64,000 nt of DNA, from contig NC_052154.1 of the NCBI RefSeq assembly GCF_902713615.1, positions 39,295,017 through 39,359,016 of the forward strand, read 5' to 3'. Source of the DNA: Scyliorhinus canicula. Taxonomy: Eukaryota. The position numbers and the translations under genes are program-made. Below are positions 1-27,100 of the stretch, piece after piece (position 1 is the stretch's first letter; every line of letters begins with the position of its first letter). A model generated the notes under the pieces. That model had not been told where the DNA came from and did not search any database. It was given only the letters and a program-made list of their open reading frames with translations.

Positions 1-154
1 CTTGAATTTCAGCAAATTGCTCCATTCACCATTCTCTTCTTTAAACAGTGTTATGACAGGCTCTTCATTTATAGCGACACATGAACACTTTTCCTCTAAA
101 ATGCTACCTTGAAGTTCCAAATCCGCCAAATATAATTTGATACCAACAAAGGCA
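1..154 (-). CDS. TDRD12: TDRD12 exon, CS/p23 domain: SAFVGIKLYLADLELQGSILEEKCSCVAINEEPVITLFKEENGEWSNLLKFK
   Basis: tgcag acceptor, phase 2, open to the window edge; LxK...WxxL CS motif. Confidence 0.93.
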
Positions 155-3100
155 CTGCAATTAAATAATATGAAGCCTCAGATAAAGATCAAAGACAATA
201 ACTTTCTTTGTAAGTAATCGAAACTTTAGCTAGCTTTTACCTAAATACTACTCTGCAATCACCAAATTTGCATGAATGTTTTGTAAAATTTCGCAACTTC
301 ACATTCAGTATGAGCCGGTCTTCCTTCTGATGCCACTTTATTTCTGGGTGAAAGCTACAGGAAAATATAAACAATGACAAGTTAAAGTGTAAAATCAAAT
401 TCAAAACTCAAAATTTTGTTTAAATTATGTAATCATATTGCACAACTAGCTTGCAGACAGGAAGATTTAATATCAATACGGATAACCTTTTATGATCCAT
501 TGTTGATCGATTTTTTGCATCTTCAGGAACATCCACAATATCTGTGATTAGAAAATAATATAAAACATAAATCTTAAAATATATATTAATTGTGGAAGAA
601 TCCTTGGAAACTGAAAATAAATGTTTTGCTTTTGCCAATTCATTTTTCTGTTTGAATGCATTGCACCTGTCATTCAGCACTTGTATTTCCAAACAAAACA
701 CAAACCACCTTTGTTAACCTCTGTTAAGCATGTCAAAGTACTTAATGGCAGTTTCATTTATTTTCCACAAACTGATTCACAGTTAAAAGTTGAAACACAT
801 TTTACGAAATTAGTTTCTAATCAAAAAAATAATTCACTGAATGTTAAATTTGAATGTTAACCAGTGTTATTCAATTTAGCATTGAAGGGGTGCTGAACCA
901 TTTAAAATGGAGTCTTTCAGTTGAAAAACTAAACCGAGACCCCATCTACAATTCAGTTGGAAGTAAAAGATCCCACTATGAGGAGGATCAGTGTTCGGGT
1001 CAAAATTTATCCTTTAAACCAACATTGTTAATGCTGCATCTGATGAATAAATAATTTTACTGTTTATTTTATTTTAAAAACATATTCATAAAAAACATTC
1101 TTAGAATATTTTCTATTTCATAACAAGAACAAATGCTACAAATTATAGTCTACAAAGGTGAATAAATACCAGTATTTCCGTCACAGAAGGCTGCACCGTT
1201 TTGTAAGCAATATAAATTTTGAAAACTGGCCAGTGAAAACTTCAAATTGTTTGCAATTTCATATAAAGCACTCCTGTTAGATGTGCTCGCTAACAGCCTG
1301 AAAGTAAAAAAAAAAACACGGTTAAGTTCCCATGCAGTACATCAAATTGAAATCAAAAGAGATAAGAATATACTTGAATATATACTGTGATGCTACAGCA
1401 TCTGTTTTAGATCTTTTCCTGGTTTGTGGCTCCTACAGTACCTCCATGCAAAACTGTATACACATTTTACAGATACTATAATGTTACATACCTCTCAACA
1501 GTCACAGCAAGTCCACTTGATAACATTAAATTTAGACTCTGGGGTCTTCCACTGAGATGACACAAAACCTTCAGAATGTTTTCCAAAACCTTGCAAAGAA
1601 CAAATGTGGCAGGATATTATCTTGACTTCATAAGCAACTCCCGTTTGATGCTAAGTTTGAGAAGTAGCAACATTTCAAACACTTCATTGGTTATAAAGCA
1701 ATTTGGAATGTCCCAAGGACATGAGACACTATATTAAACATATTTTTCTTCCAATCTCTTTCTGTTCATCAATAAGTTATGCTGAATATTTCTTACCATA
1801 GAAGTATTCAAATACTTCACAAATTAACAATGCTGTATTGAGCGGTCCCTTTTAAGTTCCAAAAATCTCCTGGGATCCATGGGGCAATTTTGTTTCAAAT
1901 TCATAAAATGCTTTTAGTTCAAACACGATGTTGAAACAAATTTTTCATATTTTGTACTGGGCATGATTCTCCGAAAAAATTTCTAGGTGCGATAGCGAGC
2001 AGGAATTGCCACGAGCTTCCCGGTACTCAGCCCAGCGAGGTTGGCAACTAAATTCAATGCTAACTGGTCCACTTAAGGTCTCATGGACTTCTCGCCACAA
2101 ATGACAGCTTGCCAGCTGATTCGCCGGGACTGTACTCGCCAGCCCCCTGCAAACAAGGTCGAGCAGCACTTAAGCTGCAGTTGCTCAGACAACCCCAGTG
2201 AGCTCGTACCAATGGCACCCAGGAGACCAGTCCCAAGATTCGGGACGCTGACCTAGGGAGGCTCCAGGGCACGGTGCAGACGAGGAGGGATGTCCTGTTC
2301 CCCGAGGGTCCCGGAAGATGGTACGAGGTGGCGACAGCTGTCATCTCGGGGAGTATGACCAGGAGGACTGACCTCCAGTGCAGAAGGAAGATCAATGACC
2401 AACGCGCCACCCACCCCACAAAGGGAGCATCCACCCACCCAACCCACCCCCAGCCCTCTCTCCACCCCCCCTCCCCACCTTCATACCCAGTCTCCCATCA
2501 ATGTGAACCAACACGTGAGGCGAATGAATCCCTCTCCTCAGGAAAAGCTCTCCCAGGATCAGCGGGAGCAGGCCAAGGTTAGCGGTGGGGTGCCAGACAT
2601 CACCTTTGAGGAGCAGGCCCTGGAGGTGACTGGGGTGGCAGAGGACAGGGCGGTCACCAATGCGAAAGCTGGTGGATGCCACAGAGGTGAGGAACCATTG
2701 GGCCCTGCCCGAAGGACCTGTCAAACGTAAGTACTGATTGCCTTACTGACTGACCCGTTCCTCCCACTGACCACATGTTCATTCGCCCGCAGGTCCTCCA
2801 GGCGACGGAGCCAGCCCATCCGGGCGGTCCCCTCTCCTGACTCAATGGAGAACATCTCGGAGGAGAGCTCAGAGGATGCAACTGTTACAGCCGCAGCACA
2901 GCTGTCATCCCCACCCTCCACCAACGCTGATACACACACCTCAGTGGGACATGTTAGTGGTCAGGCTTCTTGAGCACAATCTGGTGATTGTGCTGTTGAT
3001 GTGCATCAGGTGGCGGCAGGAACCCCCAGGTGAGACAGCAGTCAGAGAGCTGCCGGATCCCAGGACCCAGCTGGGTCCCTGCCTGATGCTGAGCTTCTGG

Positions 3101-6100: not shown

Positions 6101-9100
6101 GCCGGTGTTTCTTGGCCTCATGCGTCCGCCATCTAAATCCCTTGCTTCTCTTGGCTTCTGCTGCTTTTTGCGTCTTTGCGGCCTCTGGAGCTACTGTTGA
6201 TCGACCACGTATCTTGTGATGCTGTTGGGTAGGGTGAGGAGATGCATTTTCCCCCTGTTTTAGCAAGCTATTTTGGGTAAAAAAGCCTAATTTTGGGTTC
6301 TTGGGAGAGCCACCTGTTGTGCATCCCCGTCACCGGAAGTCCCAAGGTGGAGCTGGTGTTGCTGCCTCATCCAGTTGTGCCTGAAAGATGGTTTGCTCAA
6401 GAGATGAAGTGGCTGATTAGTCAGTGGCAGGCAAAAGTGCTGACTCCATTGAAACTGAAAAAGTAAGACACAGAATCCAGAGGAGAGTCCCAATGCGATA
6501 TCTGCAGCAGAATTTACCTCGACAGTTGAGCCACAGCCAGTTGAGCTGTGCCGCTCCCAGAGGAAGAGAAAGTCCCCGGACAAATTGAGATTTTAATGGA
6601 TTGTATACAAGTGTTTCTCAGAACTGGTGCTTTGTTAATGGGATAACTATTTCATGTATTGTATAATAAGGGACTTAAAAGGGGGAAGGCTGTATTAGCT
6701 GGCCCCTTTAAAAGAGAGCACATCAGGAGGAACATGGGGCCTCATCGCCTAATGAGAATCGAGCATGGGAATCTTGGTGCATTACGTCGGCTTTTGCAGC
6801 CAGAGTAAATCAGAGAGTGAGTAGTGATAACATTGCCAAAGACTGTGTAAATACAGTTTGTAAATAAATAGTTATAATTCATTATACATACTGGCTGGTG
6901 GTTCCAATCTTTCCTTTATTACACCAGTAATGGATAAACACTTCAACCAGAACGTGTAAACATCTCAGGTGAGATCCCCAAAGAATGGTAGAGATGGAGA
7001 GCTTGGTTGGCAGGTGTGCGAAAAGTCGGGCAGAATGCAGTCAGTTATAAAATTGAGGATATGGCTAAAGTCTGAACTTCATAGTATTAATTTCAAACCA
7101 GGAAGTTGTGGGGTATTTGGAGGAAAGAAGAGATACTTTTCTAGAAGCTTTTGTTGAGCTTGATTGGAACACAGTACAGGCCGACAGGTCAACATAGGAA
7201 TACAAGGCAAAGTTTAATTGGGTAGCCAGGGTTAGTTTAGGACACCAATTGCAAGCAGAAGGGAAGTGGTCGTGAAGGCGGTCATCGAATAAGGTTTCAC
7301 TTGCATAAAGCATACTGCTTTTTGAGCAGGTAATTTTAGCAGTCGGTTCAAATGATGTTGCCAGGCAAATACATTTAATATAAACAAAACAAGGTGACAG
7401 ACTAGTTTGAAATATTTTCAAAGTAAAGCAGTCAAACACAAAACTGGACAAAGCATTCTAATTTTTGCCACATTCAGACAACAGTTCACCTGATCTTTAT
7501 AGTACCCTTCAATAAATACATTTTGTTTGCAGTTATTCCTGTTAGACCGATAGCAACCCAAAATGTTAAATAGATGATATACCTCTGATCTTTATGCGGT
7601 TCATGTATCAAATTTATAGTAAGTTTAGATTTTCATCAGAAGAAGCTTACATCTCTCGTGTAACCTCCAAGCCAACATGGTCATAACTTTGTAAATGCTA
7701 CTCATTTCATCACAGCACCATCAGTGGTACATTGGTCTGCATCTACAATTCTCCAAATGGCGTGTTTCAAATCACTTCATAGTTAGCTTACTGCAGAGAC
7801 AAAGGACATCATTCCTCACAAGGCCAGAACAAAATGTCAGGTGGCATCAACGAATCGTTCAAAAAATGTCATTCAAGAAAAAATTTGGTGTGAAACTGGG
7901 GTTTCAGTATGCACACTCTGGACATCGACATAGAATATACAGTGCAGAAGGAGGCCATTCGGCTCATCGAGTCTGCACCAGCCCTTGGAAAGTGCGCCCC
8001 ACTTAAGCCCATACCTCCGCCTCATACCCATAACCTAGCAACCCCACCCAACTCCTTAGGGCAATTTAGCATGGGCAATCCACCTAACCTGCCCGACTTT
8101 GGACTGTGGAGGAAACAGAAGCTCCAGGAGGAGACACAAGGAGAATGTGCAGACTCTGCACAGACAGTGACCCAAGCCGGGAATTGAACCTGGGACCCTG
8201 GAGCTGTGAAGCGACAGTGCTAACCATTGTGCTACCATGCCGCCCCACTACTCTACCGAGTACAACACCTAAAGGAGTGGTTAGTTTTGCAGTCTACCCC
8301 ACCAAAAAGATAATACTGCTTTCAGAGAATAGGCTTCTTTTGTGAGGGCCACGAAGAACCCAGCACGAGTTTTCAGGATATAAAGAAATAACATTTCTTC
8401 ACAGCTCACTCCTCTCTCTCTGCTGGTTCCAAACTGGCCAGCTCTATTTATGCAGGGAGTCTGCTAATGATTTCTCCGCCCCCCTCATTGGGGAAGCTCA
8501 TACTCCCACAGGATTGTGGGATTGTCATTAGTCCCCAGCCAATGGTAAGCAGGCAGGTTATAACATCCCTCCCCCACCAAAGTCCAAGGAATCCACCGAA
8601 GACCCTGGCGAAGGAGGGCGTCGGACTCGTTTTGCCGCAGGCCGGACACCATCTGCACGAGGCGCTGGATCGGGCGACGTGTAACGAGACGGAGAGCGGC
8701 GCTTCCGTGATGAACAGCGTAACGGTTGTACATCCACGGCCCGTCGGCCCAAGGATTCCCCCTCGGAGGTGTCTTGTGTCTCCATCTCGGAGTCAGAGTC
8801 TGCTGCCTCCGTCATCTCGGCGTTTTTATCTCCACGCGGTTCTGTCACGACCTGCGCAGGCTTGAGTGAGGCACCAGAGGAAGATTGTGAGGAATATTTT
8901 CCATTGTGTCTGGTCTCTGTGGCTGTAGAAATGAGCTCCTGGGGTGAGGAATCTTTGGAAGGGATAGTCTTCTGGACCGAACATGGTCTACTTGTTTGCA
9001 CTGGAGACGACCCTGGGCTTGCACCTGGTAAGAGATAGGGCCCGTTTGGCGAAAGATTACGCCAGGGACCCACTGGGCACCACCAGCAAAATTCCGAACG

Positions 9101-12100: not shown

Positions 12101-15100
12101 GCAGGGGGACGCTTTTGGATGGAAGGGGTTGTGCCCCAAGACATGCACCTCCATTCCCTGTAGCTCCTGCACTCCTCGTTCTGCGCTCTCTCGGGACAAT
12201 ACTATTTGAATGGCCTGTTGAAAAGTCAATGTTGGCTCGGCTAACAACCTTCTCTGGGTGGCCACATTGTTAATACCGCAAACCAAACCGTCGCGTAACA
12301 TTTCTGACAAGGTCTCACCATAGTCACAGTACTCCGCAATCCTGCTTAGCCTGGATAGAAAGTCGGCAAGGGATTCTCCTGGGGTCCTCTCAGTGGTATT
12401 AAACCGGTAACGTTGGACTATCGTGGATGGGGTTGGGTTAAAATGTTGCCGCACTAAGTTCACAAGTTCATCAAACGTTTTGGTGTCCGGCGCAGCTGGG
12501 TACGTAAGGCTCCTAATCACCCCAAACGTATGCGGGCCGCAGGCGGTGAGCAATATGACCACCTGGCGCTCGTTTTCGGTGATGTTGTTTGCCCGGAAAT
12601 AGTAACGCATCCATTGTGCGTACTGGTTCCAGCTTTCCAGCGCAGCATCAAAAATATCCAAATGTCCATAGAGGCATGGTGTAATAGAAAACAACTTCCA
12701 ACCTGTATCCAACAAAAATCCAGGGAGGTGGCTTCAGCAGTGTAGACAGCTATTCACTTTAACCCTCGTTGCCAGTTTTGTGAGGGCCACGAAGAATCCA
12801 GCACAAGTTTTCAGGATACAAAGAAATAACATTTATTTACAATAACAATAAACAGCAGCAGCAACTTCCCTTGCTGCTCACTCCTTTCTCTCTGCTGGTT
12901 CCAAACTGGCCAGCTCTATTTATGCAGGGAGACTGCTAATGATTTCTCCGCCCCCCTCATTGGGGAAGCTCATACTCCCATAGGATTGTGGGATTGTCAT
13001 TAGTCCCCAGCCAATGGTAAGCAGGCAGGTTATAACAGCTTCACAGACAAAAAGGGAGCCACATGAGGATAAACAAATGAATCTAACTAAAATCCTATTA
13101 AAAGACCTTTGACCCACGAGCATCGAATTTCTGATTGCAGAATGCAGTACTATTAAATAGAAATAATTCAGACCTTGGGCTTTCCCTTCAAGTAGATTGT
13201 CACAGGCAAGTTAACTAGGTCTTGGTGTGTTGCAATATTTTGAATAAATTACCAGTTTTCAATGATGGTATCAGGAGTCAGAAGCTAACCAAATGGTTTG
13301 TGGTCACTCAAAAGCTAGCCTTAAATGGTATAATTTGAAACTACCTGTAAATTATTCATACAATAGTAATTAAATTAGTATCTTCAATTTTACCTTATCC
13401 TTTGAAGATTGCTGAATTTTTGTACAAAGATGACAGATAATGTCTTGCTCTTCAATTTCTTCACAAACCCTAAGAAAGGACACATTTATGTGCATGCAAT
13501 AAAATGCTATACTATTCTCAAAACTATAACATGATGATTTTAGATTCCAAAATATAAATCATGAAATTTCTCCAGTAATTGGATTGTTGTGAAGAGAGAA
13601 CTACCAACAGATCACTGATTTCCATCCCTAGAAAGAAAGATACCAACAGCACGTGGGGAGGCCTAATATGTTTGTGTTAGCTTCTCATTACAGTAATCTA
13701 ATACTAATCCCAGTGATCTACTCTTCACATACAAACCTGGATTTCGCTTCGCTGCAAATATTTAACCAATTTTTCCTTAAAAGGTGATACATTATCTGCC
13801 TCATTCCATGCTCTACATGAAGAATTTTTTCCCAACCTCTCTCTTCATGCTTTTTGTGGCAATTTGAAATTGAATACCCTTTGCAGCAGTGCCCAGGTAA
13901 TATTTGTTCAGCCTGGAAGGCCCAATAAGGATAAAAATAGAAATTTACTCTCGGGCTCTTCAGCTGGATAGCCAGTTGATACTGGGGATAAGTTCCACGG
14001 TATAGGTTATTGATTTTCATAGATACATAGAAGATAGGAGCAGGAGGTGGCCTTTTGGCCCTTCGAGCCTGCTCTGCCATTTATCATGATCATGGCTGAT
14101 CATCCAACTCCACAGCCTAATCCTGCTTTCTCCCCATAGCCTTTGATCCCATTCGCCCCAAGTGTTATATCTAGCCGCCTCTTGAATATATTTTTAGCAT
14201 CATATTTAAAAGGACTGATAACTGAAATAGGTGAGCATCTGGTCATCCAGTAACTGATGGCCTTGGACATGGCAGTGGCCAAAGTGTCTGTTCAAATGGG
14301 TTGGTAAGCCACTTTCAGGCCATCATGGCCTGCTTATGCTGAGGTGACCCAAGTTGACCTTTAACGCTGTATCTTTCATAAGTGCTCAATTTTTGCCGAG
14401 TCCCACTTTCTATTATAGACTTTCATAATTTGTTTTTTGAGTGACTTTACCAAATATTTTCTGCAAGGCCAAATCAACTATATTTTAGGAGCTCTACTAG
14501 ATAATCACCCCGAATTTTCTGCCAAGGGTTCTGCTGTAGCCTAGCACATGGGCTATCAAGTCTCAAAAAGAATTTTTAGCAACCTCTGATGGAACTAGAA
14601 GTTCATTAACGTCCGTTGAGGACAGAATCAGGGTCGGCTGAGATTCCTGCCTACTAAGACTCACAAATGAACAGCAATACCCAGGAGTACGGGAAGCAAT
14701 TCATGCTTTTGGAACTTCAGCAATAAGTTGAAGTTTCACAGAAGGGATGAAGGTAGGTAGATTGGCCAGAAAAAATACATTTAACGTTTACAAAAACATG
14801 CATCTTAATTACAATAAGTATTGCAAGCCAAGTAAATTAATTGAATAACAATGAAAATAAAACATTTCATTTTACAACATATGCATAACTCATATTTATC
14901 CTTTTATTTCACATTAACAAAAGACTGGAAGGAGGAAAAAGGTAACTGGGACCGAGTAAGGAAGGAGAAAGATAATGGGAACAGAGATAAGGAAACAGAG
15001 ATAAGGAAAAAAGGTAAGAATGAGGAAGATTAGGTGGGATACAAGGAGGATAGATGAGGGAACAGGTTTTGTCAGGATATGCAAGTTTATAATTTACACA

Positions 15101-18100
15101 AGGAAACCTATTTTTGGACTAGTTAAAGCAAATCCAGGTGCTAAAATTCAAATTTTTTTGCAATCAGGCAGGCAAACTTTGTATTTCATGCGATGTTCCC
15201 TTCTAACCTGAACCCCAACGTTTCTACCTGCGAGAGCTTAGTGACCTTTCTTCTAGGAGTGCTATCATTATATATGGAAGATAACATTTAAATCATTCTT
15301 TTATACCTGCTGGAGGAAAGAAGTGCAGCTAAAGCTCCAATAATAGCTTCCCACACATTATTTTCAATCGGCTTTTTCAGTAAATGGCAAAGGTGCTTCA
15401 ATGCATCGGCATCAATAATAGCTGTACTGAGATCACGGTTTTCACTTAGAATCCCAAGTGCAACGCAGACGCTTTCTTGTAGTTCTGCATTGGTTACTAA
15501 AACCAGAGAGAAATCAGGGCAGTGAAAAATGGTTCCATCAATTTTGAGAATAACATTGAACAAAATTCTGAGCACTGGTGGTCAGAAATCTTAATTAATG
15601 CTGAAATTTGATATGGATTTCTCACCCTGAAGTAGGTTCACAAGCACACAAATTCCTTTTTCATTTTTGATTTCATCCAGATTTCTGCAATAATAATGAC
15701 TGAGAATTAGATTCTAAAAAAGAATTCAGAGCATTTAAATGCTTCAGAACATTAAAGATTTTTTACAGAATAGAACTATGAATACCCAGGAGTGATTTAT
15801 CAGATAACATTCTTATCGAGGATGATAGAGGATTACACAGATGATTGGGACAGTGGGATCAGTTTTAGATTGTTTTAACCAATACAGACATGATAGGTAA
15901 ACAATTATGGTTCTAGGATGTGCTCATACCATCTGTGTTTCCACTTCTTAAGCTGAACAAATGACAAAAGAAAATAACATTTAAAGTGTTTTAAAACAGC
16001 TTTTACTTGTACCGAAGACTTGGTACTTGATAGTACTGTTGATGACACCTTCCATCATTTTGCTAATGATCGAGAGTAGACAGATGGTGTGTAATTGGCA
16101 GGGTTCGATTCACCCTTTTTGTGATCATGACATGCCCGGGCAGTCTTCCCACGTTGCCAGGTAGATGCCAGTGTTGTAGCCGTACAGGAACAGCTTGGTT
16201 AAGGGCACAGCTAGTTCTGGGGCAAAAGTCTTCAGTACTACTGCCAGAATCTTGTCAGTGTCCATATCCTTGGCAGTCCCCACATCCTTGGCAGTGCCCA
16301 CATCCTTGGCAGTGTCCACATCCTTGGCAGTGTCCAGTGCCTTCAGCTGTTTCTTGATGGAGTGAATCAAATTGCTTGAAGACGGACAGCTGTAATGCTG
16401 GGAACTTCCGGATGAGGCTGAGATGGATTACCCACTGAACAATTCTGGCTGAATGCTTCAGTCTTGACTTGTGCATGTGTTGGATTGAGGATGGGATATT
16501 TGTGGAGCCACCTCTTTCAGTTATTTCCCCACCATCTTTAATGGCTGGATGTGGCAGCATTTCAGCTTAGATTTGTTCCATTGGTTGTAGGTAATTAGCT
16601 CATTCTACCGTATGCTTCTTGCACTGTTTGACATGCAAGTAGTCTTGTTTTCACCTGGCGAAGACCTCATTTTAGGAATGCCTGGTGCTATTCCTGCATG
16701 CCCTTCTGCACTTCATTGAACCTGGGTTGATCGCTGAGCTTGATAGTACTGGGAGCGAGAAGGAAATGCCAGGCCACGAGGTTACAGATTGAAGTTGTAT
16801 ACAATTCTGCTGTTACTGATGGCGCACAGCATCTCATGGATTGAACGTCTAGACCAGTTAGGTCACAAGGGAGTCTGGTGACATTTATTTTAATACAAGG
16901 AGTCTTATGAACAAGGTAGTTGAATTGAGGACACAAATTGAAACCTGGGGTATGATCATTGCTGTCACAGACATGTTTGAGAGAGGGGCAGGATTGGCAG
17001 CTCAATATTCCGGAATACAGGGTCACCTGGCAAGATAGGGAAGGACATAAAAGAGGATGGTGTGTCACAATTTTGATCAGGGAATCAATTACAGCAGTAA
17101 GGAGGGATGTCATCTTAGAAGACTCTTCAACTGAAGTCATATAGGTAGAATGTAAAAACCAAAAAAAAGCAATCACATTGCTGGGAGTGTTCTATAGGCC
17201 CCCTAATCATCCGAGAGAAATAGAAGAGCAGATATATAGGCAACTTTCAGAGAAGTGTATAAGTAATAAGGTAGTGATAGTGGAGGATTTCAACTTCCCC
17301 AACATTAACTGGGGTAGCCATAGTGTAAAAGGTTTAGAGGGAGCGAAATTCTTAAAATGCATCGAGGAGAAATAGGTCAGGTTCTAAATGAATACTTTGT
17401 GTCAGTGTTCACTTGTGAGAGGAAAAGTGTGGGTTTAGAAATCAGGAAGAAAGGCTATGATAAAATTAAAGAGATTAACATAGACAGAGAGGAGGTTCCG
17501 AATGGTCCGGCAGGCTTAAAAGTAGACAAATCTCCAGGGTCAGGTGACACTTATCCCAGGCTGTAGAGTGAGGCAAGGGAGGAAATAACAGGGGCGCTGT
17601 TTATTTTCAATTCCTTTCTGGCCAAAGGAGAGGCACCGGAGGACTGAAGGATAGTCAATGTGATACTTTATTCAAGAAGGGAGGACAGGATAAACCAGGA
17701 AACTACAGGACAGTCAGTCTAACCTCAGTGGCAGGGAAACAATTGGAAGCAATTCTGAAACACAGGATTAATTTGCATTTGGAGGGGCAGGGATTAATTG
17801 AGAATAGTCAGCATGGCTTTGTTAAGGCAAGGTCATGTCTGACCAACTTGAGTGAATTTTTCGAAGAGGTGACCTAGTATGCAGATGAGGGAAATGCATT
17901 TGGCGTAGTCTACTTGAACTTCAGCAAGGCTTTTGAACACATGGGAGACATATAGTGAAGGTAAGAGCCCATGGGATCCAAGGAAATTTGGCAAATTGGA
18001 TCCAGATGTTTGAGGGGTGTTTTTCCAAGTGGAATCCTGTGCCCAGTGGGGTCCCGCAGGTATGTGTTGGGGCTCTTGCTGTTTGTGGTTGATACAAATG

Positions 18101-21100
18101 ATTTAGATATGAATGTTGAAGGGTTGATCAGTAAGTTTGCGGATGATACAAAAACTGGTGGGGTGGTAAATAGTGAGGAGGACTTCCTTAGATTACAGGA
18201 GGATATAGACGGGCTGATCCAGCAGAGGGCAGCAGAGCAGAGCTACTGATCAGCTGTTCTGGGGAAATTTGCATACGTGCAGTGCGGTCAGCCTAAGTTG
18301 AAGGGGAATCTGCGAAGGAGACCCGAGGAGTTTGAGTGAAGGCAATCATCCAGCAGAGGGCAGCAGAGCAGAGCTACTGATCAGCTGTTCTGGGGAAATT
18401 TGCATACGTGCAGTGCGGTCAGCCTAAGTTGAAGGGGAATCTGCGAAGGAGACCCGAGGAGTTTGAGTGAAGGCAATCATCCAGCAGAGGGCAGCAGAGC
18501 AGAGCTACTGATCAGCTGTTCTGGGGAAATTTGCATACGTGCAGTGCGGTCAGCCTAAGTTGAAGGGGAATCTGCGAAGGAGACCCGAGGAGTTTGAGTG
18601 AAGGCAATCATCCAGCAGAGGGCAGCAGAGCAGAGCTACTGATCAGCTGTTCTGGGGAAATTTGCATACGTGCAGTGCGGTCAGCCTAAGTTGAAGGTGG
18701 TTTGCGGAGAGGCTGTTGGCAAGTGACAGTTAAACCCGAAACACTTCGTGAGTGTTCCCCACCCTACCTCCTCCTCTAACCAACCCCCCCACCCCACGGT
18801 GGTTGGGAAGCGGGAGCAGGGGCCTGTCGTGAAGGTGAGTGAGTGCCTTTAAATTTGCTTACCTTTCAGCGGGAGCAGGGTTTGAGGGAATATCAGGTAA
18901 GCTCTTCCTTTCTTTTTCTTTTTCTTGTTTTTTTTTTTAAATCTAGAGGTGATGTCAGGGAAGGCAGTACAATACTCCTCCTGCAGAATGTTTGAGGTGA
19001 GGGACGCCGTCAGTGTCCCTGCTGATTTCATCTGTGGGAAGTGCACCCAACTCCAGCTCCTCAAAAACCGTGTTAGGGACCTGGAGCTTGAGCTGGATGA
19101 ACTTCGGATCATTCGGGAGGCAGAGGGGGTCATAGATAGGAGCTTCAGGGAAGTAGTTACACCAAAGACTGGAGATAGATGGGTAACTGTAAGAGGGACT
19201 GGGAAGAAGCAGTCAGTGCAGGGACCCCCTGCGGTCGTTCCCCTGAGTAACAAGTATACCGTTTTGGATACTTGTGGGGGGGACGACTTACCAGGGGTAA
19301 GCCATGGGGTACGGGCCTCTGGCACGGAGTCTGTCCCTGTTGCTCAGAAGGGAAGGGGGGAAAGGAGTAGAACATTAGTAATTGGGGACTCAATAGTCAG
19401 GGGCACAGATAGGAGATTTTGTGGGAGCGAGAGAGACTCACGTTTGGTATGTTGCCTCCCAGGTGCAAGGGTAAGTGATGTCTCGGATCGTGTTTTCCGG
19501 GTCCTTAAGGGGGAGGGGGAGCAGCCCCAAGTCGTAGTCCACATTGGCACTAACGACATAGGTAGGAAAGGGGACAAGGATGTCAGGCATGCCTTTAGGG
19601 AGCTAGGATGGAAGCTCAGAGCGAGAACAAACATAGTTGTTATCTCTGGGTTGTTGCCCGTGCCACGTGATAGTGAGATGAGGAATAGGGAGAGAGAGCA
19701 ATTAAACACGTGGCTACAGGGATGGTGCAGGCGGGAGGGATTCAGATTTCTGGATAACTGGGGCTCTTTCTGGGGAAGGTGGGACCTCTATAGACAGGAT
19801 GGTCTACATCTGAACCTGAGGGGCACCAATATCCTGGGAGGGAGATTTGTTAGTGCTCTTTGGGGGGGTTTAAACTAATTCAGCAGGGGCATGGGAACCT
19901 GGATTGTAGTTTTGGGGTACGGGAGATTGAGAGTATAGAGGTCAGGAGCACAGATTTGACTTCGCAGGAGGGTGCCAGTGTTCAGGTAGGTGGTTTGAAG
20001 TGTGTCTACTTCAATGCCAGGAGTATACAAAATAAGGTAGGGGAACTGGCAGCATGGGTTGGTACCTGGGACTTCGATGTTGTGGCCATTTCAGAGACAT
20101 GGATAGAGCAGGGACAGGAATGGTTGTTGCAGGTTCCGGGGTTTAGGTGTTTTAGTAAGCTCAGAGAAGGGGGCAAAAGAGGGGGAGGTGTGGCGCTGCT
20201 AGTCAAGGACAGTATTACAGTGGCGGAAAGGATGCTAGATGGGGACTCTTCTTCTGAGGTAGTATGGGCTGAGGTTAGAAACAGGAAAGGAGAGGTTACC
20301 CTGTTGGGAGTTTTCTATAGGCCACCTAATAGTTCTAGGGATGTAGAGGAAAGGATGGCGAAGATGATTCTGGAAAAGAGCGAAAGTAACAGGGTAGTTG
20401 TTATGGGAGACTTTAACTTTCCAAATATTGACTGGAAAAGATATAGTTCGAGTACATTAGATGGGTCATTCTTTGTACAATGTGTGCAGGAGGGTTTCCT
20501 GACACAATATGTTGACAGGCCAACAAGAGGCGAGGCCACATTGGATTTGGTTTTGGGTAATGAACCAGGCCAGGTGTTAGATCTGGAGGTAGGTGAGCAC
20601 TTTGGAAACAGTGACCACAATTCGGTGACCTTTACGTTAGTGATGGAAAGGGATAAGTATACCCCGCAGGGCAAGAGTTATAGCTGGGGGAAGGGCAATT
20701 ATGATGCCATTAGACATGACTTAGGATGTGTTGGTTGGAGAAGTAGGCAGCAAGGGTTGGGCACACTGGATATGTGGAGCTTGTTCAAGGAACAGCTATT
20801 GCATGTTCTTGATAAGTACGTACCAGTCAGGCAGGAAGGGGGTCGAGCGAGGGAACCGTGGTTTACCAAAGAAGTGGAATCTCTTGTTAAGAGGAAGAAG
20901 GAGGCCTATGTGAAGATGAGGCGTGAAGTTTCAGTTGGGGCGCTTGATAGTTACAAGGAAGCGAGGAAGGATCTAAAGAGAGAGCTGAGACGAGCAAGGA
21001 GGGGACATGAGAAGTCTTTGGCAGGTAGGATCAAGGAAAACCCAAAAGCTTTCTATAGGTATGTCAGGAATAAAAGAATGACTAGGGTAAGAGTAGGGCC

Positions 21101-24100
21101 AGTCAAGGACAGTGGTGGGAAGTTGTGTGTGGAGGCTGAGGAGATAAGCGAGATACTAAATGAATACTTTTCGTCAGTATTCACTCAAGAAAAAGATAAT
21201 ATTGTGGAGGAGAATGCTGAGACCCAGGCTATTAGAATAGATGGCATTGAGGTGCGTAGGGAAGAAGTGTTGGCAATTCTGGACAAGGTGAAAATAGATA
21301 AGTCCCCGGGGCCGGATGGGATTTATCCTAGGATTCTCTGGGAAGCCAGGGAAGAGATTGCTGAGCCTTTGGCTTTGATTTTTAGGTCATCATTGGCTAC
21401 AGGAATAGTGCCAGAGGACTGGAGGATAGCAAATGTGGTCCCTTTGTTCAAGAAGGGGAGTAGAGATAACCCCGGTAACTATAGGCCGGTGAGCCTAACG
21501 TCTGTGGTGGGAAAAGTCTTGGAGAGGATTATAAAAGATACGATTTATAATCATCTAGATAGGAATAATATGATTAGGGACAGTCAGCATGGTTTTGTGA
21601 AGGGTAGGTCATGCCTCACAAACCTTATCGAGTTCTTTGAGAAGGTGACTGAACAGGTAGACGAGGGTAGAGCAGTTGATGTGGTGTATATGGATTTCAG
21701 TAAAGCGTTTGATAAGGTTCCCCACGGTCGGCTATTGCAGAAAATACGGAGGCTGGGGATTGAGGGTGATTTAGAGATGTGGATCAGAAATTGGCTAGTT
21801 TAAAGAAGACAGAGAGTGGTAGTTGATGGGAAATGTTCAGAATGGAGTTCAGTTACGAGTGGCGTACCACAAGGATCTGTTTTGGGGCCGTTGCTGTTTG
21901 TCATTTTTATAAATGACCTAGAGGAGGGCGCAGAAGGATGGGTGAGTAAATTTGCAGACGACACTAAAGTCGGTGGAGTTGTAGACAGTGCGGAAGGATG
22001 TTGCAGGTTACAGAGGGACATAGATAAGCTGCAGAGCTGGGCTGAGAGGTGGCAAATGGAGTTTAATGTGGAGAAGTGTGAGGTGATTCACTTTGGAAAG
22101 AATAACAGGAATGCGGAATATTTGGCTAACGGTAAAATTCTTGGTAGTGTGGATGAGCAGAGGGATCTCGGTGTCCATGTACATAGATCCCTGAAAGTTG
22201 CCACCCAGGTTCATAGGGTTGTGAAGAAGGCCTATGGTGTGTTGGCCTTTATTGGTAGAGGGATTGAGTTCCGGAGCCACGAGGTCATGTTGCAGTTGTA
22301 CAAAACTCTAGTACGGCCGCATTTGGAGTATTGCGTACAGTTCTGGTCGCCTCATTATAGGAAGGACGTGGAAGCTTTGGAACGGGTGCAGAGGAGATTT
22401 ACCAGGATGTTGCCTGGTATGGAGGGAAAATCTTATGAGGAAAGGCTGATGGACTTGAGGTTGTTTTCGTTAGAGAGAAGGTTAAGAGGTGACTTAATAG
22501 AGGCATACAAAATGATCAGAGGGTTAGATAGGGTGGACAGCGAGAGCCTTCTCCCGCAGATGGAGGTGGCTAGCACGAAGGGACATAGCCTTAAATTGAG
22601 GGGTAATAGATATAGGACAGAGGTCAGAGGTAGGTTTTTTACGCAAAGAGTGGTGAGGCCGTGGAATGCCCTACCTGCAACAGTAGTGAACACGCCAACA
22701 TTGAGGGCATTAAAAAATTTATTGGATAAGCATATGGATGATAAGGGCATAGTGTAGGTTAGATGGCCTTTAGATTTTTTCCATGTCGGTGCAACATCGA
22801 GGGCCGAAGGGCCTGTACTGCGCTGTATCGTTCTATGTTCTATGGTCAGATGGCTATCAATGGCAAATGGAATTCAATCTGGTTAAATGTGAGGTGATGC
22901 ACTTGGGCAGGACAGACAAGGCAAGGGAATACATGATAAACGGCACAACCCTGGGAAGCATGGAAGATCAGAGGGACCTTGGGGTACATGTACATTGGTC
23001 CCTTAAGGTAGCAGAGAAGGCGAAAACAGTGGTTAAGAAGCCATATGGTATACTTGCCTTTATTAGCCGAGGCATAGAGTTTAAGAGTAGGGAGGTTGTG
23101 CTGGAACTGTATAAAACGTTGGTTAGGCACAGCTAGAGTATGGTGCGAAGTTCTGGAATCCATATTATAGGAGGGATGTGATAGCACTTGAAAGCGTGCC
23201 GAGGAGACTTACCAGACTGTTACCTGGGCTGGAGAATTTTAGCTATGAAAAGAGATTGGATAGACTGGAGTGGTTTTCCTTGGAACAGATAAGTCTGAGG
23301 GGGGACATGACTGAGATGTATAAAATTATGAGGGGCATAGATTGAATAGACAGGAAACCTTTCCTCTTGGTGGAGGGGTCAATGACCAGGGGGCATAGAT
23401 TTAAGGTAAGGGAGAGGAGATGTGAGGAAAAACTTTTTTATCCAGAGGGTGGTGGAAGTCTAACTTACTGCCTGAAAGGGTGGTAGAGACAGATCCTCTT
23501 AACATTTAAGAAATATTTAGGTGTGCACTTGCAATATTAAGACATAGAAGGCTGTGGGTGAAGTGCTGGAAAATGGAATTAGAATAGTTAGGTGGTTGTT
23601 TTTGACTGGTGCAGATGCAATGGGCCGAAGGGCCTTTTCTGTGCTGTAGGTCTCTATGCCTATGACCCAGTTTAGAGTTACTAGATGCATCTAAAATGTA
23701 TCCCATTCAGCACACTGGTGGTGCCATACATAATGATCTATGTAATAATTTGATACATGTGCTGCACATTAAATTGAGAACTCAATAACAATGAATACAT
23801 ATTCAAATATTCCAGTATATGTTACCCATGTAACTTGCATGGTAATAGATTCTGGAATAAGTTGAATAAGTATCTTTCCCAGTGCTAGTGCATTGTCCTT
23901 TAATTTCATGATCTAGCCACCAGTGGCAAAATTTTCACCCAAACTTGAGGTGTGAACGAACACAGGTCAGGCATTCAATTTCACAGTGCCTAGGGAAACC
24001 TCTGGTCAGCAAGCTAGGAAGGGGCCAGTGTTCCAGGATGCCTCTGAGACACCCTTGCCACCACAAACCCCTTCCTTACCTGGCAACAGCTGCAAGTCAT

Positions 24101-27100
24101 CCTGTAAGATGGGTTTCTCCTCTGCAGTGCTAGCCCAGTAGCGGTGGCTATTTTTTAGTTAACACGTTTTAAATGTGCTAAGGGGACACCTGGAGATGAT
24201 GTCACCTTCTGTCTCCCTTACATGCAACAACAGGCTGCAGCTATCTCTGTAGGGCCTTCTATTGGCTCTCCAGCTTTCCGAGCCTGCATGCTGTCCTTAA
24301 CTGAACGCAAGTGCACCTCCTGTCTTTTATGATATTCTTTCACGGGACGTGGGTATCATTGGTTTGGCCAGCATTTTAATTGCCCATCCCCAATTGCCTG
24401 TACCCACGAATTATCTAATCAAGCCAAGATCACTGTTGGGGGACTGATTCTGACACAGCACAGGGTTGGGTTCCAAATTTGACCCTGACCTTGGGGTCCT
24501 GAACCAAAGCTTAGAATCCAGGCCGTTGTCCTGAAAATTACTCAAAACACTTCAAGTTTCTGTTTCTCCATGATGATTTTCTTCATATCTGAAATATCTA
24601 GTGTCCAAAATAAGGGTTTAAACAAACTGAAAAAAAACACACATTTTGGAACATTCTGGTCTACTCTCCAACAGAACATGTTGAACTGTCAAAGAATATT
24701 GAGTAGTATTACCTTACTTGCATCTTGGCCAAATGAGTCATTGCTACTATTACATCAGCTTGTTCTTTAGTAGAAAGGAACTGTAGCAATCTGCACAGGA
24801 AGCTTAAACTTGATTCTGATGCATTGTCTGCAGGATACTGCAGCACCATGTTTTTGAGTTCCTCCACTGTTGTGGTTCTTAATGAAGATGCTTTAAAATA
24901 AAAGATAAACCATTTCAAACATGTTTTGACTGGGTTATTTTGTGAGATTTTATTGGAGCAAGGCGATGGATGTACATTATTTCACAAAATAACTTTTTCA
25001 GAATTAATAGAATTACCACAATAATCACACAGAAAAATCTCATCCATCTCATTATCTGAAATCCCCTCCCCTGCCACGCAGCCCTCCTGCAAAAAGAAAG
25101 TGTCGCAATCCAATGGAATTCACTTGAGGCTAATGGACAAGGAGAAACTATAATGTAAGAGGCTAATGGAATGTTGGCCTTTATCTCAAGGGGTCTGGCA
25201 TATAAAAAAGGGGAAAGTGATGATGCTGTTAGACATTTAGAGAACTGAGCTCAGTTCGGGATATTACACCCCAGGAAGGATATGTTGGTCTGAGGAGTGC
25301 AGTACAGATTAACCAGAATGAAGCTGGGCTAAAACAGATAATTTATCAGGCTGAACTGCATTGATCGGGCTTGCACTGGCCTTGAGAACGCAAGATTAAG
25401 TGGTGATCCATCTGGTTGTTTAAGCTGATTTAAAGAAAGACTCTGTCTGGAGAATCCAAAACAAGGGAGTGCAAACTCAGTTAAAAATATGCTGTGGTCA
25501 GAAAGGGCGAACTTCACACAAGGATCATGGAAAGCTCTCCCACCCAAAAAAACTGTGGTAGCTAAGTAGCATGAACATTTCAAACCGACGATTGACTGAT
25601 TGTTGATAGGCAAGGTAATTAAGGGTTACAGAATCAGGTGACAAGGTAGAATTAAGATTCAGATCAGCTATGAGCCAACTGAATCGCAGCACAGATTCAA
25701 GTGGCAAAATGGCCTATTACTGTTCCTAATTTCTAAACTGTGTTGCACTGACAATGCCACAGGACATATTGGAAAATCTACAAACAATTTTGCACTGATT
25801 TAAAAAAAGATTCTTTGGACAGACTCGAAGGTTATTCAGAGTTCAAAAATAAATATGTAATTCTTGCATTTTTAAAGCACTTTTAATGAAGTAAAACATA
25901 ACAAGGGGCTTCATAGGAGGACTATCAGCAGAAATCAATGCAAAGCCACGTAGAGATGATAGTACAGATGCCTTTGGTCAAAGGTAGGTTTTAAAAAGCA
26001 TCTTAAAAGTGTTAAGAGAGGTTTAAGGAGAGAATTCCAGAGCTTAGGATCAAAATAGTTGAAGGCACAGTTACCAATCGTGGAGCATGAAACTTGTAGA
26101 TTAAATTTTAAAAAATCAAGGGGTTGGCAAACTGTAGTCAATTTTGGTCAGCAAGTGATGAGAGAACAGAGTATTTAAGATTTCGAACAGCTTAAATTTA
26201 CATAAAGGGGATAGGAGATCAGGAGAACATTAGAATAGTGAAGTCTGCAAATAACAAAGGTTTGAATGATGGTTTCAGCTCCAGATGAGCGGGGACAAAG
26301 GCAGTGTTGATTTTCTCAACAAATGCCTGTGGAACATCCTCTTAAAATTGTAAGTTTTCAGCTTGATATCACCATACTTCACGCTGATACCATGTAATAA
26401 TTTACACATTAGGCAACTGAATCTTACACAGATTGCACTTGGCCAACAGTTGGACATTTTCAGCTTAAAAAACTGCCAGAGCAGTTTACTAACTTTATAA
26501 TCAGGTAAGCATCACTTACAATTTAGATTTTGATCTCCTAAAAGGGCACAAACAGAAGAACCGAGGCATGAAATGGAGCTGGTTTGACCATTTATTACTG
26601 CTTCTTCGGGAAACAATTGGTTTAAAATTGCAGGTGGCCCTTCACCTTGTCCTTTAGATACAATACATTCTGATAGTTTTAAAGAGCCAGCATTAGAGGG
26701 ATCTTGCACAACGACATGGTAGCACACAACAGCAGCTACAAAGAAAAATACAAGGGAAATATTTCAATTTAATACATTAATGACATTTCTCTGTTATGAC
26801 TGAAGTATACTTCCCAATGCAGACTTCCAAATTTTGTTCCCATTAAAAAAAGTGTTAAAAAAACTCAATTTATTGTGGGCACGACACGGTGGCACAATGG
26901 TTAGCACTGCTGCCTCACAGCGCCAGGCACCCGGGTTTGATTCTGGTTCCGGGTTACTGTCCGTGTGGAGTCTGCACTTTCTCCCTGTGTCAGTGTGAAT
27001 TTCCTCCGGGTGCTCCAGTTTCCTCCCACTGTCCAAAGATGTGCAGGTTAGGTGGATTGGCCATGCTAAATTGCCTCTTGGTATCCAAATGGTTAGGTGG

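What the first reader, a model, noticed from the sequence alone, without database searches (positions are those of the whole stretch)
1170..24890. About five armadillo-like repeats inside a piRNA-pathway protein
The spliced peptide shows roughly 41-42 aa periodicity: SLSFLCRLLQFLSTKEQADVIVAMTHLAKM / QVRNLDEIKNEKGICVLVNLLQVTNAELQESVCVALGILSE / NRDLSTAIIDADALKHLCHLLKKPIENNVWEAIIGALAALLS / SSRVCEEIEEQDIICHLCTKIQQSSKDKVLENILKVLCHLSG / RPQSLNLMLSSGLAVTVERLLASTSNRSALYEIANNLKFSL. This fits the ARM consensus (GGixxLvxLL...xvqxxAxxALxNL). An ARM domain directly ahead of a p23/CS domain suggests a chaperone-linked scaffold (inference), possibly relevant to HSP90-dependent PIWI loading.
Basis: partly seen in the sequence, partly recalled or inferred. 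Interest (0 to 1): 0.7.

Follow-up and report, generated by a model that had tools for sequence, protein, structure and literature searches.

The report
Armadillo-repeat domain in shark TDRD12
The shark version of the piRNA-pathway helicase TDRD12 carries a real, expressed and conserved armadillo-repeat domain just before its C-terminal CS domain; mouse, human, zebrafish and fly TDRD12 lack this module, it looks ancestral rather than new, and nothing here ties it to HSP90.

Summary
All five quoted peptides lie on the minus strand in six exons (24890 to 1170). Joined, they equal residues 1378-1572 of the window's own 1756-aa protein, a TDRD12 orthologue. Pfam Arm scores 36.6 bits on residues 1340-1600 (cut-off 20.6). 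An AlphaFold model (pLDDT 73, pTM 0.71) shows five H1-H2-H3 units after N-terminal cap helices. It superposes only on ARM proteins (TM 0.6-0.79). Spliced contigs from three studies join the exons exactly. Exon structure and frame match the elephant shark, and dN/dS is about 0.32, like the rest of the protein. A CS/p23-type beta-sandwich follows after a disordered linker of about 35-40 residues.

The module is present in all sampled sharks, skates, rays and a chimaera. It is absent from tetrapod, paddlefish and zebrafish TDRD12. The coelacanth keeps a 33-aa relic of one ARM exon, and two AlphaFold DB entries named "RNA helicase" and "Tudor domain-containing protein" match ARM plus CS together. 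The module therefore looks ancestral and later lost.

The function is inferred: a protein-docking solenoid beside the CS domain, not an importin-type peptide binder. The HSP90 idea has no support. Public databases already tag these proteins with Arm, so novelty is modest.

The parts
24713..24890 (-). ARM exon a (P0023 aa about 1350-1408): N-terminal cap helices and repeat R1
   Evidence: Exact protein-to-DNA chaining with GT-AG junctions. The 3' end of this exon appears as the loose end next to exon b in spliced contigs. Helices are in the model.
15626..15684 (-). ARM exon b (aa about 1409-1428): H1-H2 of repeat R2
   Evidence: Joint 15496>15626 seen in 4 runs from 3 studies.
15307..15496 (-). 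ARM exon c (aa about 1429-1491): H3 of R2 and all of R3, the most canonical repeats
   Evidence: Pfam Arm 23 bits on this exon alone. PDB hits to designed ArmRPs, SPAG6 and importin alpha-3. 69% identical to the elephant-shark protein. Highest pLDDT, 85-92.
13394..13469 (-). ARM exon d (aa about 1492-1517): H1-H2 of R4
   Evidence: Joint 13468>15306 in spliced contigs.
1492..1589 (-). ARM exon e (aa about 1518-1549): H3 of R4 and H1-H2 of R5; the exon with a relic in coelacanth TDRD12
   Evidence: Its start appears as the loose end after exon d. The coelacanth segment P0039:1153-1185 scores 19.0 bits against this exon's profile, against at most 8.9 for 5000 shuffles.
1170..1297 (-). ARM exon f (aa about 1550-1592): H3 of R5 and the start of the disordered linker
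487..541 (-). Linker exon g (aa about 1593-1610), disordered and fast-evolving
   Evidence: pLDDT 26-48. dN/dS 1.36 over 25 codons.
241..354 (-). CS domain exon h (aa about 1611-1648)
   Evidence: Beta strands with pLDDT about 80-87. Arabidopsis At3g03773 (PDB 2kmw; a p23-type protein from my own knowledge) at E 3e-4 and SGT1 CS at E 0.42. 54-60% identical to tetrapod TDRD12 CS.
1..154 (-). CS domain exon i (aa about 1649-1700); the gene runs on beyond the window start

Best explanation
Shown: window 24890-1170 (minus strand) encodes, in six exons, a genuine armadillo-repeat domain of the shark TDRD12 orthologue (residues about 1350-1585 of 1756). It has N-terminal cap helices plus five units of about 42 residues and three helices each, forming an ARM-type superhelix. 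It sits after a third Tudor domain. A flexible linker of about 35-40 residues ties it to the C-terminal CS (p23-like) beta-sandwich. The exons are transcribed and spliced as predicted. Exon structure and frame are kept across roughly the whole of cartilaginous-fish evolution. The domain evolves under purifying selection at the same rate as the Tudor and helicase parts.

Inferred: like other ARM solenoids, it serves as a rigid protein-docking surface. It would add a partner-binding site next to the CS domain of a protein whose job is to scaffold PIWI, EXD1 and other piRNA-biogenesis factors. It lacks the Trp/Asn ladder of importin-alpha-type repeats, so it is unlikely to bind basic NLS-like peptides that way. 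The partner is unknown.

Evolution (inferred): the module was already present in the common ancestor of jawed vertebrates, and possibly earlier. Tetrapods and ray-finned fishes replaced it with a disordered acidic linker.

The confidence given applies to the shown part (a real, expressed, constrained ARM domain in TDRD12). The docking function I put at about 0.5 and the ancestral-presence reading at about 0.7.
For: Identity: P0023 is the window's own protein and contains the quoted peptide. Its Pfam domains are TUDOR x3, DEAD, Helicase_C and Arm, and its orthologues are named TDRD12.

ARM: Pfam Arm 36.6 bits against a cut-off of 20.6. PDB sequence hits. AF2 pLDDT 73.4 and pTM 0.71 with 16 helices in H1-H2-H3 order. 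The top 50 Foldseek PDB hits are all designed or engineered proteins, 45 titled armadillo and 5 titled only "Engineered Protein" (4hxt, 4rzp, 4rv1 chains; 4rzp also matches exon c by sequence); TM 0.5-0.75, mostly 0.6-0.73. AFDB clusters and Atlas return only ARM families, TM 0.7-0.79.

Expression: spliced contigs in 4 runs from 3 studies, with no mismatches in exons b, c and d. One contig is 6609 nt long.

Constraint: exon lengths are 178/59/190/76/98/128 in the window against 184/59/193/76/98/131 in the elephant shark, so all differences are multiples of 3. dN/dS is 0.32 for ARM, 0.31 for the whole region, 0.20 for CS and 1.36 for the ARM-CS linker.

Distribution: every listed cartilaginous-fish TDRD12 aligns over at least part of the ARM region; several models miss whole exons and the Cetorhinus model aligns only over its start. 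Tetrapods and paddlefish align only up to about residue 1090 and again from the CS domain. Zebrafish Tdrd12 is described as 2 Tudor + DEXDc + ACD (PMC5485951). The coelacanth has a relic of exon e. Two AFDB entries match ARM and CS together at E 9e-15 and 1.6e-12.

No importin-type ladder: in the alignment to designed ArmRPs, the binding Trp aligns with Cys and the binding Asn with Gly in R2. The same is seen by eye for R3-R5.
Against: Only R2 and R3 are recognised by the Pfam Arm model. R4 and R5 have moderate confidence (pLDDT 64-78) and lose their H1 helices in the second model. Repeat-to-repeat profile similarity is weak. The structure is a prediction from a shallow alignment of 16 sequences. 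No binding partner was tested, so the docking function is by analogy only. dS of 0.7-1.0 is close to saturation, so the dN/dS values are rough. The stingray and manta models lack exons b and c, the two best repeats, so part of the domain may be dispensable. The organisms of the two AFDB hits were not shown. The coelacanth relic is a single exon in a single gene model.
Confidence: 0.85

Rival explanations
1. One reading: ARM and CS together form an HSP90 co-chaperone-like scaffold that helps HSP90-dependent loading of PIWI proteins.
For: The CS domain is of the p23/SGT1 type. HSP90 and FKBP6/Shutdown are known piRNA-pathway factors, as reviewed in PMC12526068.
Against: According to PMC12526068, which cites Pandey 2013, the mouse TDRD12 CS domain did not bind HSP90 in vitro. 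The fly BoYb/SoYb CS domain binds Vreteno. ARM and CS are not predicted to form one rigid unit (pTM 0.46, disordered linker). TDRD12 works in mouse and zebrafish without any ARM domain.
Confidence: 0.1
2. The ARM module is an invention of cartilaginous fishes, gained by exon gain or shuffling in their stem lineage, and is not ancestral.
For: The sequence searches found the ARM region only in cartilaginous-fish TDRD12. Insect BoYb/SoYb are described as helicase-eTudor-CS with no ARM.
Against: The coelacanth keeps a collinear 33-aa segment of equal length, homologous to exon e, between Tudor 3 and CS (19.0 bits against at most 8.9 in 5000 shuffles). AFDB entries named "RNA helicase" and "Tudor domain-containing protein" match ARM and CS in one alignment.
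Confidence: 0.15
3. The region is only a generic helical or HEAT-like spacer with no specific ARM fold or function, and the Arm hit is a chance match of amphipathic helices.
For: Internal repeat similarity is weak. There are weak hits to HEAT_2 and Cnd1. pLDDT is moderate outside R2-R3.
Against: Arm scores above its gathering threshold and HEAT_2 below its own. The repeats have three helices, not two. All structural neighbours are ARM families. Purifying selection contrasts with the neighbouring true linker, which has dN/dS 1.36.
Confidence: 0.05

Closest known systems
TDRD12 (ECAT8) of mouse, human, zebrafish and Bombyx; fly BoYb/SoYb
   Same: Orthologous protein. N-terminal Tudor, DEAD-box helicase core, second Tudor and C-terminal CS domain align at 41-49% identity to tetrapod, coelacanth and paddlefish TDRD12; named TDRD12 in public records.
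   Different: The published architecture is Tudor-DEAD-Tudor-CS (PMC4712191; PMC5485951; PMC12526068). The shark protein has about 500 extra residues between Tudor 2 and CS: a third Tudor domain and the ARM domain. Tetrapods and paddlefish have a disordered, acidic linker of about 90-100 residues there.
Canonical armadillo-repeat proteins (designed ArmRPs, importin-alpha, ARMC4/ODAD2, ARMC3, SPAG6, Vac8, RAP1GDS1)
   Same: Units of about 42 residues with three helices, a superhelical fold, a Pfam Arm match, and TM 0.6-0.79.
   Different: It is short (five units plus a cap) and embedded in a helicase/Tudor protein. The Trp/Asn peptide-binding ladder of importin-alpha-type repeats is replaced, for example by Cys and Gly in R2. 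No single ARM family stands out as a donor; the ARM_ARMC5 match of 30-35 bits is far below that family's cut-off of 79.9.
p23 / SGT1 / NudC-type CS-domain co-chaperones
   Same: The C-terminal domain is a seven-stranded CS beta-sandwich. It is related by sequence to Arabidopsis At3g03773 (PDB 2kmw; a p23-type protein from my own knowledge) and by fold to CS and p23 entries.
   Different: No HSP90 binding is known for the TDRD12 CS domain; the mouse test was reported negative. No known co-chaperone of this class was found here with an ARM domain in front of its CS domain.

Membership tests
Armadillo repeat (Pfam PF00514, ARM clan) | Sequence match to the Arm profile at or above the curated gathering score | tested here: met
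   36.6 bits in two stretches on P0023:1340-1600, and 25.4 bits on the whole protein, against a cut-off of 20.6. 23 bits on exon c alone. 28.8 bits in the elephant-shark orthologue.
Armadillo repeat (Pfam PF00514, ARM clan) | Tandem units of about 42 residues, each with three helices (short H1, H2, long H3) | tested here: met
   The AF2 model shows H1-H2-H3 triplets for R2-R5 and H2-H3 for R1. This is a prediction, and in the second model H1 of R4 and R5 is lost.
Armadillo repeat (Pfam PF00514, ARM clan) | Superhelical solenoid that superposes on solved ARM structures | tested here: met
   Foldseek PDB: the top 50 are all designed or engineered proteins, 45 titled armadillo and 5 titled only "Engineered Protein"; probability 1.00, TM 0.5-0.75, mostly 0.6-0.73. 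Atlas: TM 0.72-0.79, rmsd about 3 A over 236-252 residues.
Importin-alpha-type peptide-binding ARM | Conserved Trp and Asn on H3 of successive repeats, forming the NLS-binding groove | tested here: not met
   In the HMMER alignment to designed ArmRPs, the Trp position aligns with Cys and the Asn position with Gly in R2. By eye the same positions are G/A, K/H and N/F in R3-R5. The role of these residues is from established knowledge of importin-alpha.
TDRD12 orthologue | Tudor, DEAD-box helicase core, Tudor and C-terminal CS domains in this order, with best matches named TDRD12 | tested here: met
   Pfam TUDOR x3, DEAD and Helicase_C. CS domain. 41-49% identity to tetrapod, coelacanth and paddlefish TDRD12 over up to about 1090-1150 residues, and the names given.
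TDRD12 orthologue | Binds EXD1 through the helicase core and a PIWI protein through Tudor 2; needed for secondary piRNA biogenesis | not testable with these tools
   Known for mouse and Bombyx (PMC4712191). Not tested in any shark.
p23/CS HSP90 co-chaperone | CS beta-sandwich fold | tested here: met
   Seven strands with pLDDT about 80-87. PDB 2kmw (Arabidopsis At3g03773; p23-type from my own knowledge) at E 3e-4. CS and p23 entries in AFDB. The Pfam CS model itself is below threshold (15.7 bits in the elephant shark).
p23/CS HSP90 co-chaperone | Direct binding to HSP90 | not testable with these tools
   Not tested here. Reported negative for the mouse TDRD12 CS domain in vitro (PMC12526068 citing Pandey 2013).

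The most novel reading that the evidence does not exclude
The Tudor3-ARM-CS tail is the ancestral C-terminal module of TDRD12-type helicases in animals. It recruits a piRNA-pathway partner that has never been seen because every model organism studied (mouse, zebrafish, fly, silkworm) has lost the ARM part. Cartilaginous fishes would then preserve an ancestral interaction of the PIWI-EXD1-TDRD12 machinery, with the coelacanth caught in the middle of losing it.
Probability: 0.25. Interest if true: 0.55.

Novelty: new variant of a known kind. Interest (0 to 1): 0.35.

Why it matters
TDRD12 is essential for secondary piRNA biogenesis and fertility in mouse and zebrafish. Its domain map in the literature (Tudor-DEAD-Tudor-CS) comes only from lineages that lack this module. 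If TDRD12 of early-branching vertebrates carries a conserved, expressed ARM docking domain and a third Tudor domain, the ancestral protein probably had more interaction surfaces than the model-organism versions. That gives a concrete handle, the ARM domain as bait, for finding partners. It is also a clean case of domain loss during vertebrate evolution. The finding is an incremental domain-architecture result, not a new mechanism, and automatic Pfam annotation already tags these proteins with Arm.

Tried and rejected
- **Repeat-to-repeat profiles:** hhalign comparison of the five repeats gave only weak signals (best E 0.002 for R3-R4), so internal periodicity alone would not prove ARM.
- **Earlier notes:** The search of earlier findings around the window returned nothing.
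- **Atlas feature searches:** residues 860-1756 gave no usable hit. Residues 1340-1756 gave only sub-threshold ARM rows.
- **Atlas shape search:** the two-domain model returned only ARM families.
- **dN/dS with a close relative:** not possible. The great-white gene spans 161 kb and no DNA was served.
- **Coelacanth locus:** not retrievable, because this isoform is not on record. Its other ARM exons could not be looked for.
- **Remnants in other bony vertebrates:** an HMM of the shark ARM region found nothing significant in 101 tetrapod and paddlefish TDRD12 sequences (E above 1). Short resemblances in the marsupial and turtle linkers were judged to be chance.
- **ARM-CS packing:** AF2 of ARM plus CS gave pTM 0.46, so there is no evidence that the two domains pack together.
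- **Rfam:** no RNA family matched in the window.
- **Pandey 2013 (PMC3799322):** not held in the library, so the HSP90-negative result is cited second-hand.
Full report
**What is there**

Exact chaining of the window's own annotated protein onto the DNA gives six exons with canonical GT-AG junctions:

| Exon | Window coordinates |
|---|---|
| a | 24713-24890 |
| b | 15626-15684 |
| c | 15307-15496 |
| d | 13394-13469 |
| e | 1492-1589 |
| f | 1170-1297 |

A short linker exon follows at 487-541, then two CS-domain exons at 241-354 and 1-154.

The protein is P0023 (1756 aa). It is listed without a source, which marks it as the window's own. Upstream exons in the window encode the C-terminal helicase lobe, a Tudor domain (47-45 kb) and a further Tudor domain (36.7-32.3 kb). 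Pfam finds TUDOR three times, DEAD, Helicase_C and Arm. The best-matching public proteins are all named TDRD12. The gene is therefore the shark orthologue of the piRNA-biogenesis helicase TDRD12.

**Is it an armadillo domain?**

Sequence evidence:
- Pfam Arm scores 36.6 bits (E 4e-9, two stretches) on residues 1340-1600, against a gathering score of 20.6.
- Exon c alone scores 23 bits.
- Exon c alone, run against all PDB sequences, hits consensus-designed armadillo proteins. Their summed E-values are inflated by identical repeats, at about 11 bits per repeat. It also hits natural SPAG6 (4e-5) and importin alpha-3 (4e-3).
- In an exhaustive HMMER scan of 1.84 billion cluster representatives, the same 62 residues found one TDRD12 representative (elephant shark, 69% identity). 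Every other hit was matched at several repeated stretches, as tandem ARM repeats would be; these hits were not scanned against Pfam. None shares the Tudor or helicase part.

Structure evidence:
- An AlphaFold2 model of residues 1335-1600, built on 16 cartilaginous-fish sequences, has mean pLDDT 73.4 and pTM 0.71.
- It consists of 16 helices: two cap helices, an H2-H3 pair (R1) and four H1-H2-H3 triplets (R2-R5).
- Foldseek against the PDB returns only designed or engineered proteins in its top 50. Forty-five are titled armadillo and five are titled only "Engineered Protein". TM is 0.5-0.75, mostly 0.6-0.73, at probability 1.00.
- AlphaFold DB clusters and the ESM Atlas shape search return only ARM families (ARABIDILLO, Vac8, ARMC4/ODAD2, ARMC3, SPAG6), with TM by query of 0.7-0.79.
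- The language-model look-alikes are ARM proteins as well.

Weak points:
- Only R2 and R3 are seen by the Pfam model.
- R4 and R5 are modelled with less confidence.
- Profile comparison of the repeats with one another is weak (best E 0.002).

"About five ARM repeats" is a fair description: five units plus an N-terminal cap.

**Is it real, expressed and constrained?**

- **Expression.** Logan contigs of four runs from three studies, under the same species label, lie only on exons b, c and d. They skip the two introns exactly at GT..AG sites and have no mismatches.
- Their loose ends continue into the end of exon a and the start of exon e. One contig is 6609 nt long, about the size of a full mRNA.
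- **Exon structure.** The elephant-shark locus (L001) has the same exon structure. ARM-region exon lengths are 184/59/193/76/98/131 against 178/59/190/76/98/128 here. Every difference is a multiple of three.
- **Selection.** Pairwise NG86 dN/dS between the two species is given below. dS is 0.7-1.0, so these values are rough.

| Region | dN/dS |
|---|---|
| ARM | 0.32 |
| All 1044 aligned codons | 0.31 |
| Tudor 2 | 0.38 |
| Tudor 3 | 0.27 |
| CS | 0.20 |
| ARM-CS linker (25 codons) | 1.36 |

- **Identity to the great white.** It is 85% in the ARM region and 86% overall.

**Surroundings**

The CS domain is supported by several results:
- A sequence match to Arabidopsis At3g03773 (PDB 2kmw; a p23-type protein from my own knowledge) at E 3e-4, and a weak match to SGT1 CS.
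- A seven-stranded sandwich with pLDDT about 80-87 in the ARM+CS model.
- CS and p23 neighbours in AlphaFold DB.

In that two-domain model the 35-40 residues between ARM and CS have pLDDT 26-48 and pTM is only 0.46. There is no sign that the two domains form one rigid body.

**Distribution and history**

Every listed cartilaginous-fish TDRD12 aligns over at least part of the ARM region. Several gene models miss whole exons, and the basking-shark (Cetorhinus) model aligns only over the start of the region.

| Group | Species sampled |
|---|---|
| Sharks | great white, whale shark, two bamboo sharks, epaulette shark, zebra shark, sawshark, smooth-hound, basking shark |
| Skates | three species |
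| Other rays | a sawfish, an electric ray, a stingray, a manta |
| Chimaeras | elephant shark |

The stingray and manta models lack exactly exons b and c. That is two whole repeats, and the skip is in frame.

Other lineages:
- Tetrapod and paddlefish proteins (1200-1390 aa) align with the shark protein only up to about residue 1090 and again from the CS domain. In between they have a low-complexity acidic linker.
- Zebrafish Tdrd12 is described as two Tudor domains, DEXDc and an ACD/CS-like domain (PMC5485951).
- Mouse, silkworm and fly relatives are described as Tudor-helicase-Tudor-CS or helicase-Tudor-CS (PMC4712191; PMC12526068).

Two results argue that the module is old rather than a cartilaginous-fish novelty:
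- The coelacanth protein keeps the third Tudor domain. Between it and the CS domain it has a single 33-residue segment (P0039:1153-1185), collinear with and as long as shark exon e. That segment scores 19.0 bits against the exon-e profile, while the best of 5000 shuffles scores 8.9.
- Foldseek with the ARM+CS model puts two AlphaFold DB entries on top whose alignments span both domains. They are A0A2B4RYJ2 ("RNA helicase", residues 311-886, E 9e-15) and A0A7J7JXZ9 ("Tudor domain-containing protein", residues 182-676, E 1.6e-12). The first had already matched the ARM model alone.

The organism column was blank. From memory these accession blocks belong to invertebrates, but that is unverified. 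My reading is that the jawed-vertebrate ancestor had Tudor3-ARM-CS. Cartilaginous fishes kept it, the coelacanth retains a relic, and tetrapods and ray-finned fishes lost it.

**How it probably works**

- **Shown:** a folded-looking ARM solenoid, flexibly tethered to a CS domain, in a scaffold protein of the piRNA pathway.
- **Inferred from what ARM domains do in general:** it offers a docking surface for another protein or an extended peptide.

The alignment to designed ArmRPs shows that the Trp and Asn that make the importin-type binding ladder are replaced, by Cys and Gly in R2 and by other residues in R3-R5. An NLS-type binding mode is therefore unlikely.

In flies the neighbouring CS domain binds Vreteno. 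In silkworm cells it is needed for nuage localisation. The ARM domain may extend this C-terminal recruitment module, but that is speculation.

The mouse TDRD12 CS domain is reported not to bind HSP90 in vitro (PMC12526068 citing Pandey 2013). TDRD12 also works without ARM in mouse and zebrafish.

**Novelty and verdict**

I found no paper describing an ARM domain in TDRD12. The precomputed Pfam annotation of the public shark proteins already lists PF00514 and PF24768. This is therefore a real but modest finding: a lineage-retained variant of the TDRD12 architecture, with a plausible story of ancestral presence and later loss. It is of interest mainly to piRNA-pathway and domain-evolution specialists.

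Noticed in passing
window 36573-36698, 36233-36352, 32328-32469 (minus strand): A third Tudor domain (P0023 about 1119-1240) lies between Tudor 2 and the ARM domain. It is present in cartilaginous fishes and the coelacanth but absent from the tetrapod and paddlefish TDRD12 sequences compared.
   Followed up: partly
alignment A1, rows P0032 (Hemitrygon akajei) and P0037 (Mobula hypostoma): The stingray and manta TDRD12 models lack exactly exons b and c, which is repeats R2 and R3 (83 aa, in frame). This is either real loss of two repeats in this ray order or alternative splicing. Two other models (P0031, P0036) lack exon d and part or all of exon e, probably through annotation gaps.
   Followed up: no
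window about 18200-22760 (plus strand, inside the intron between exons a and b): A non-LTR retrotransposon lies antisense to the gene. It has an ORF with a GDSL-esterase domain, then endonuclease and reverse transcriptase. The RT reading frame is interrupted near 21800. A perfect 131-bp x 3.7 tandem repeat sits at 18217-18697. The element explains the strong G-over-C skew between 17 and 23.5 kb.
   Followed up: partly
window about 8850-12730 (minus strand, inside the intron between exons d and e): Remains of an LTR-type retroelement: a gag-like ORF, reverse transcriptase, RNase H and an integrase zinc domain, spread over several different frames, so it is broken.
   Followed up: partly
window, 13 places, e.g. 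8059-8246, 28872-29072, 51500-51800, 56521-56730, 61581-61811: A SINE-like repeat of about 200 bp occurs 13 times on both strands at 67-94% identity. It produces the recurring pseudo-ORFs seen in the six-frame listing. No Rfam family matched.
   Followed up: partly
window 13972-14223 (intron between exons c and d): Very high depth of short contigs in all four runs that were laid (up to thousands), with many different flanks. This is an abundantly represented repeat, single-copy within this window.
   Followed up: no
P0022 versus P0023: The window's gene has two predicted products. The shorter one skips the helicase exon at 62155-62283 (43 aa) and carries three extra residues near position 272.
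   Followed up: no
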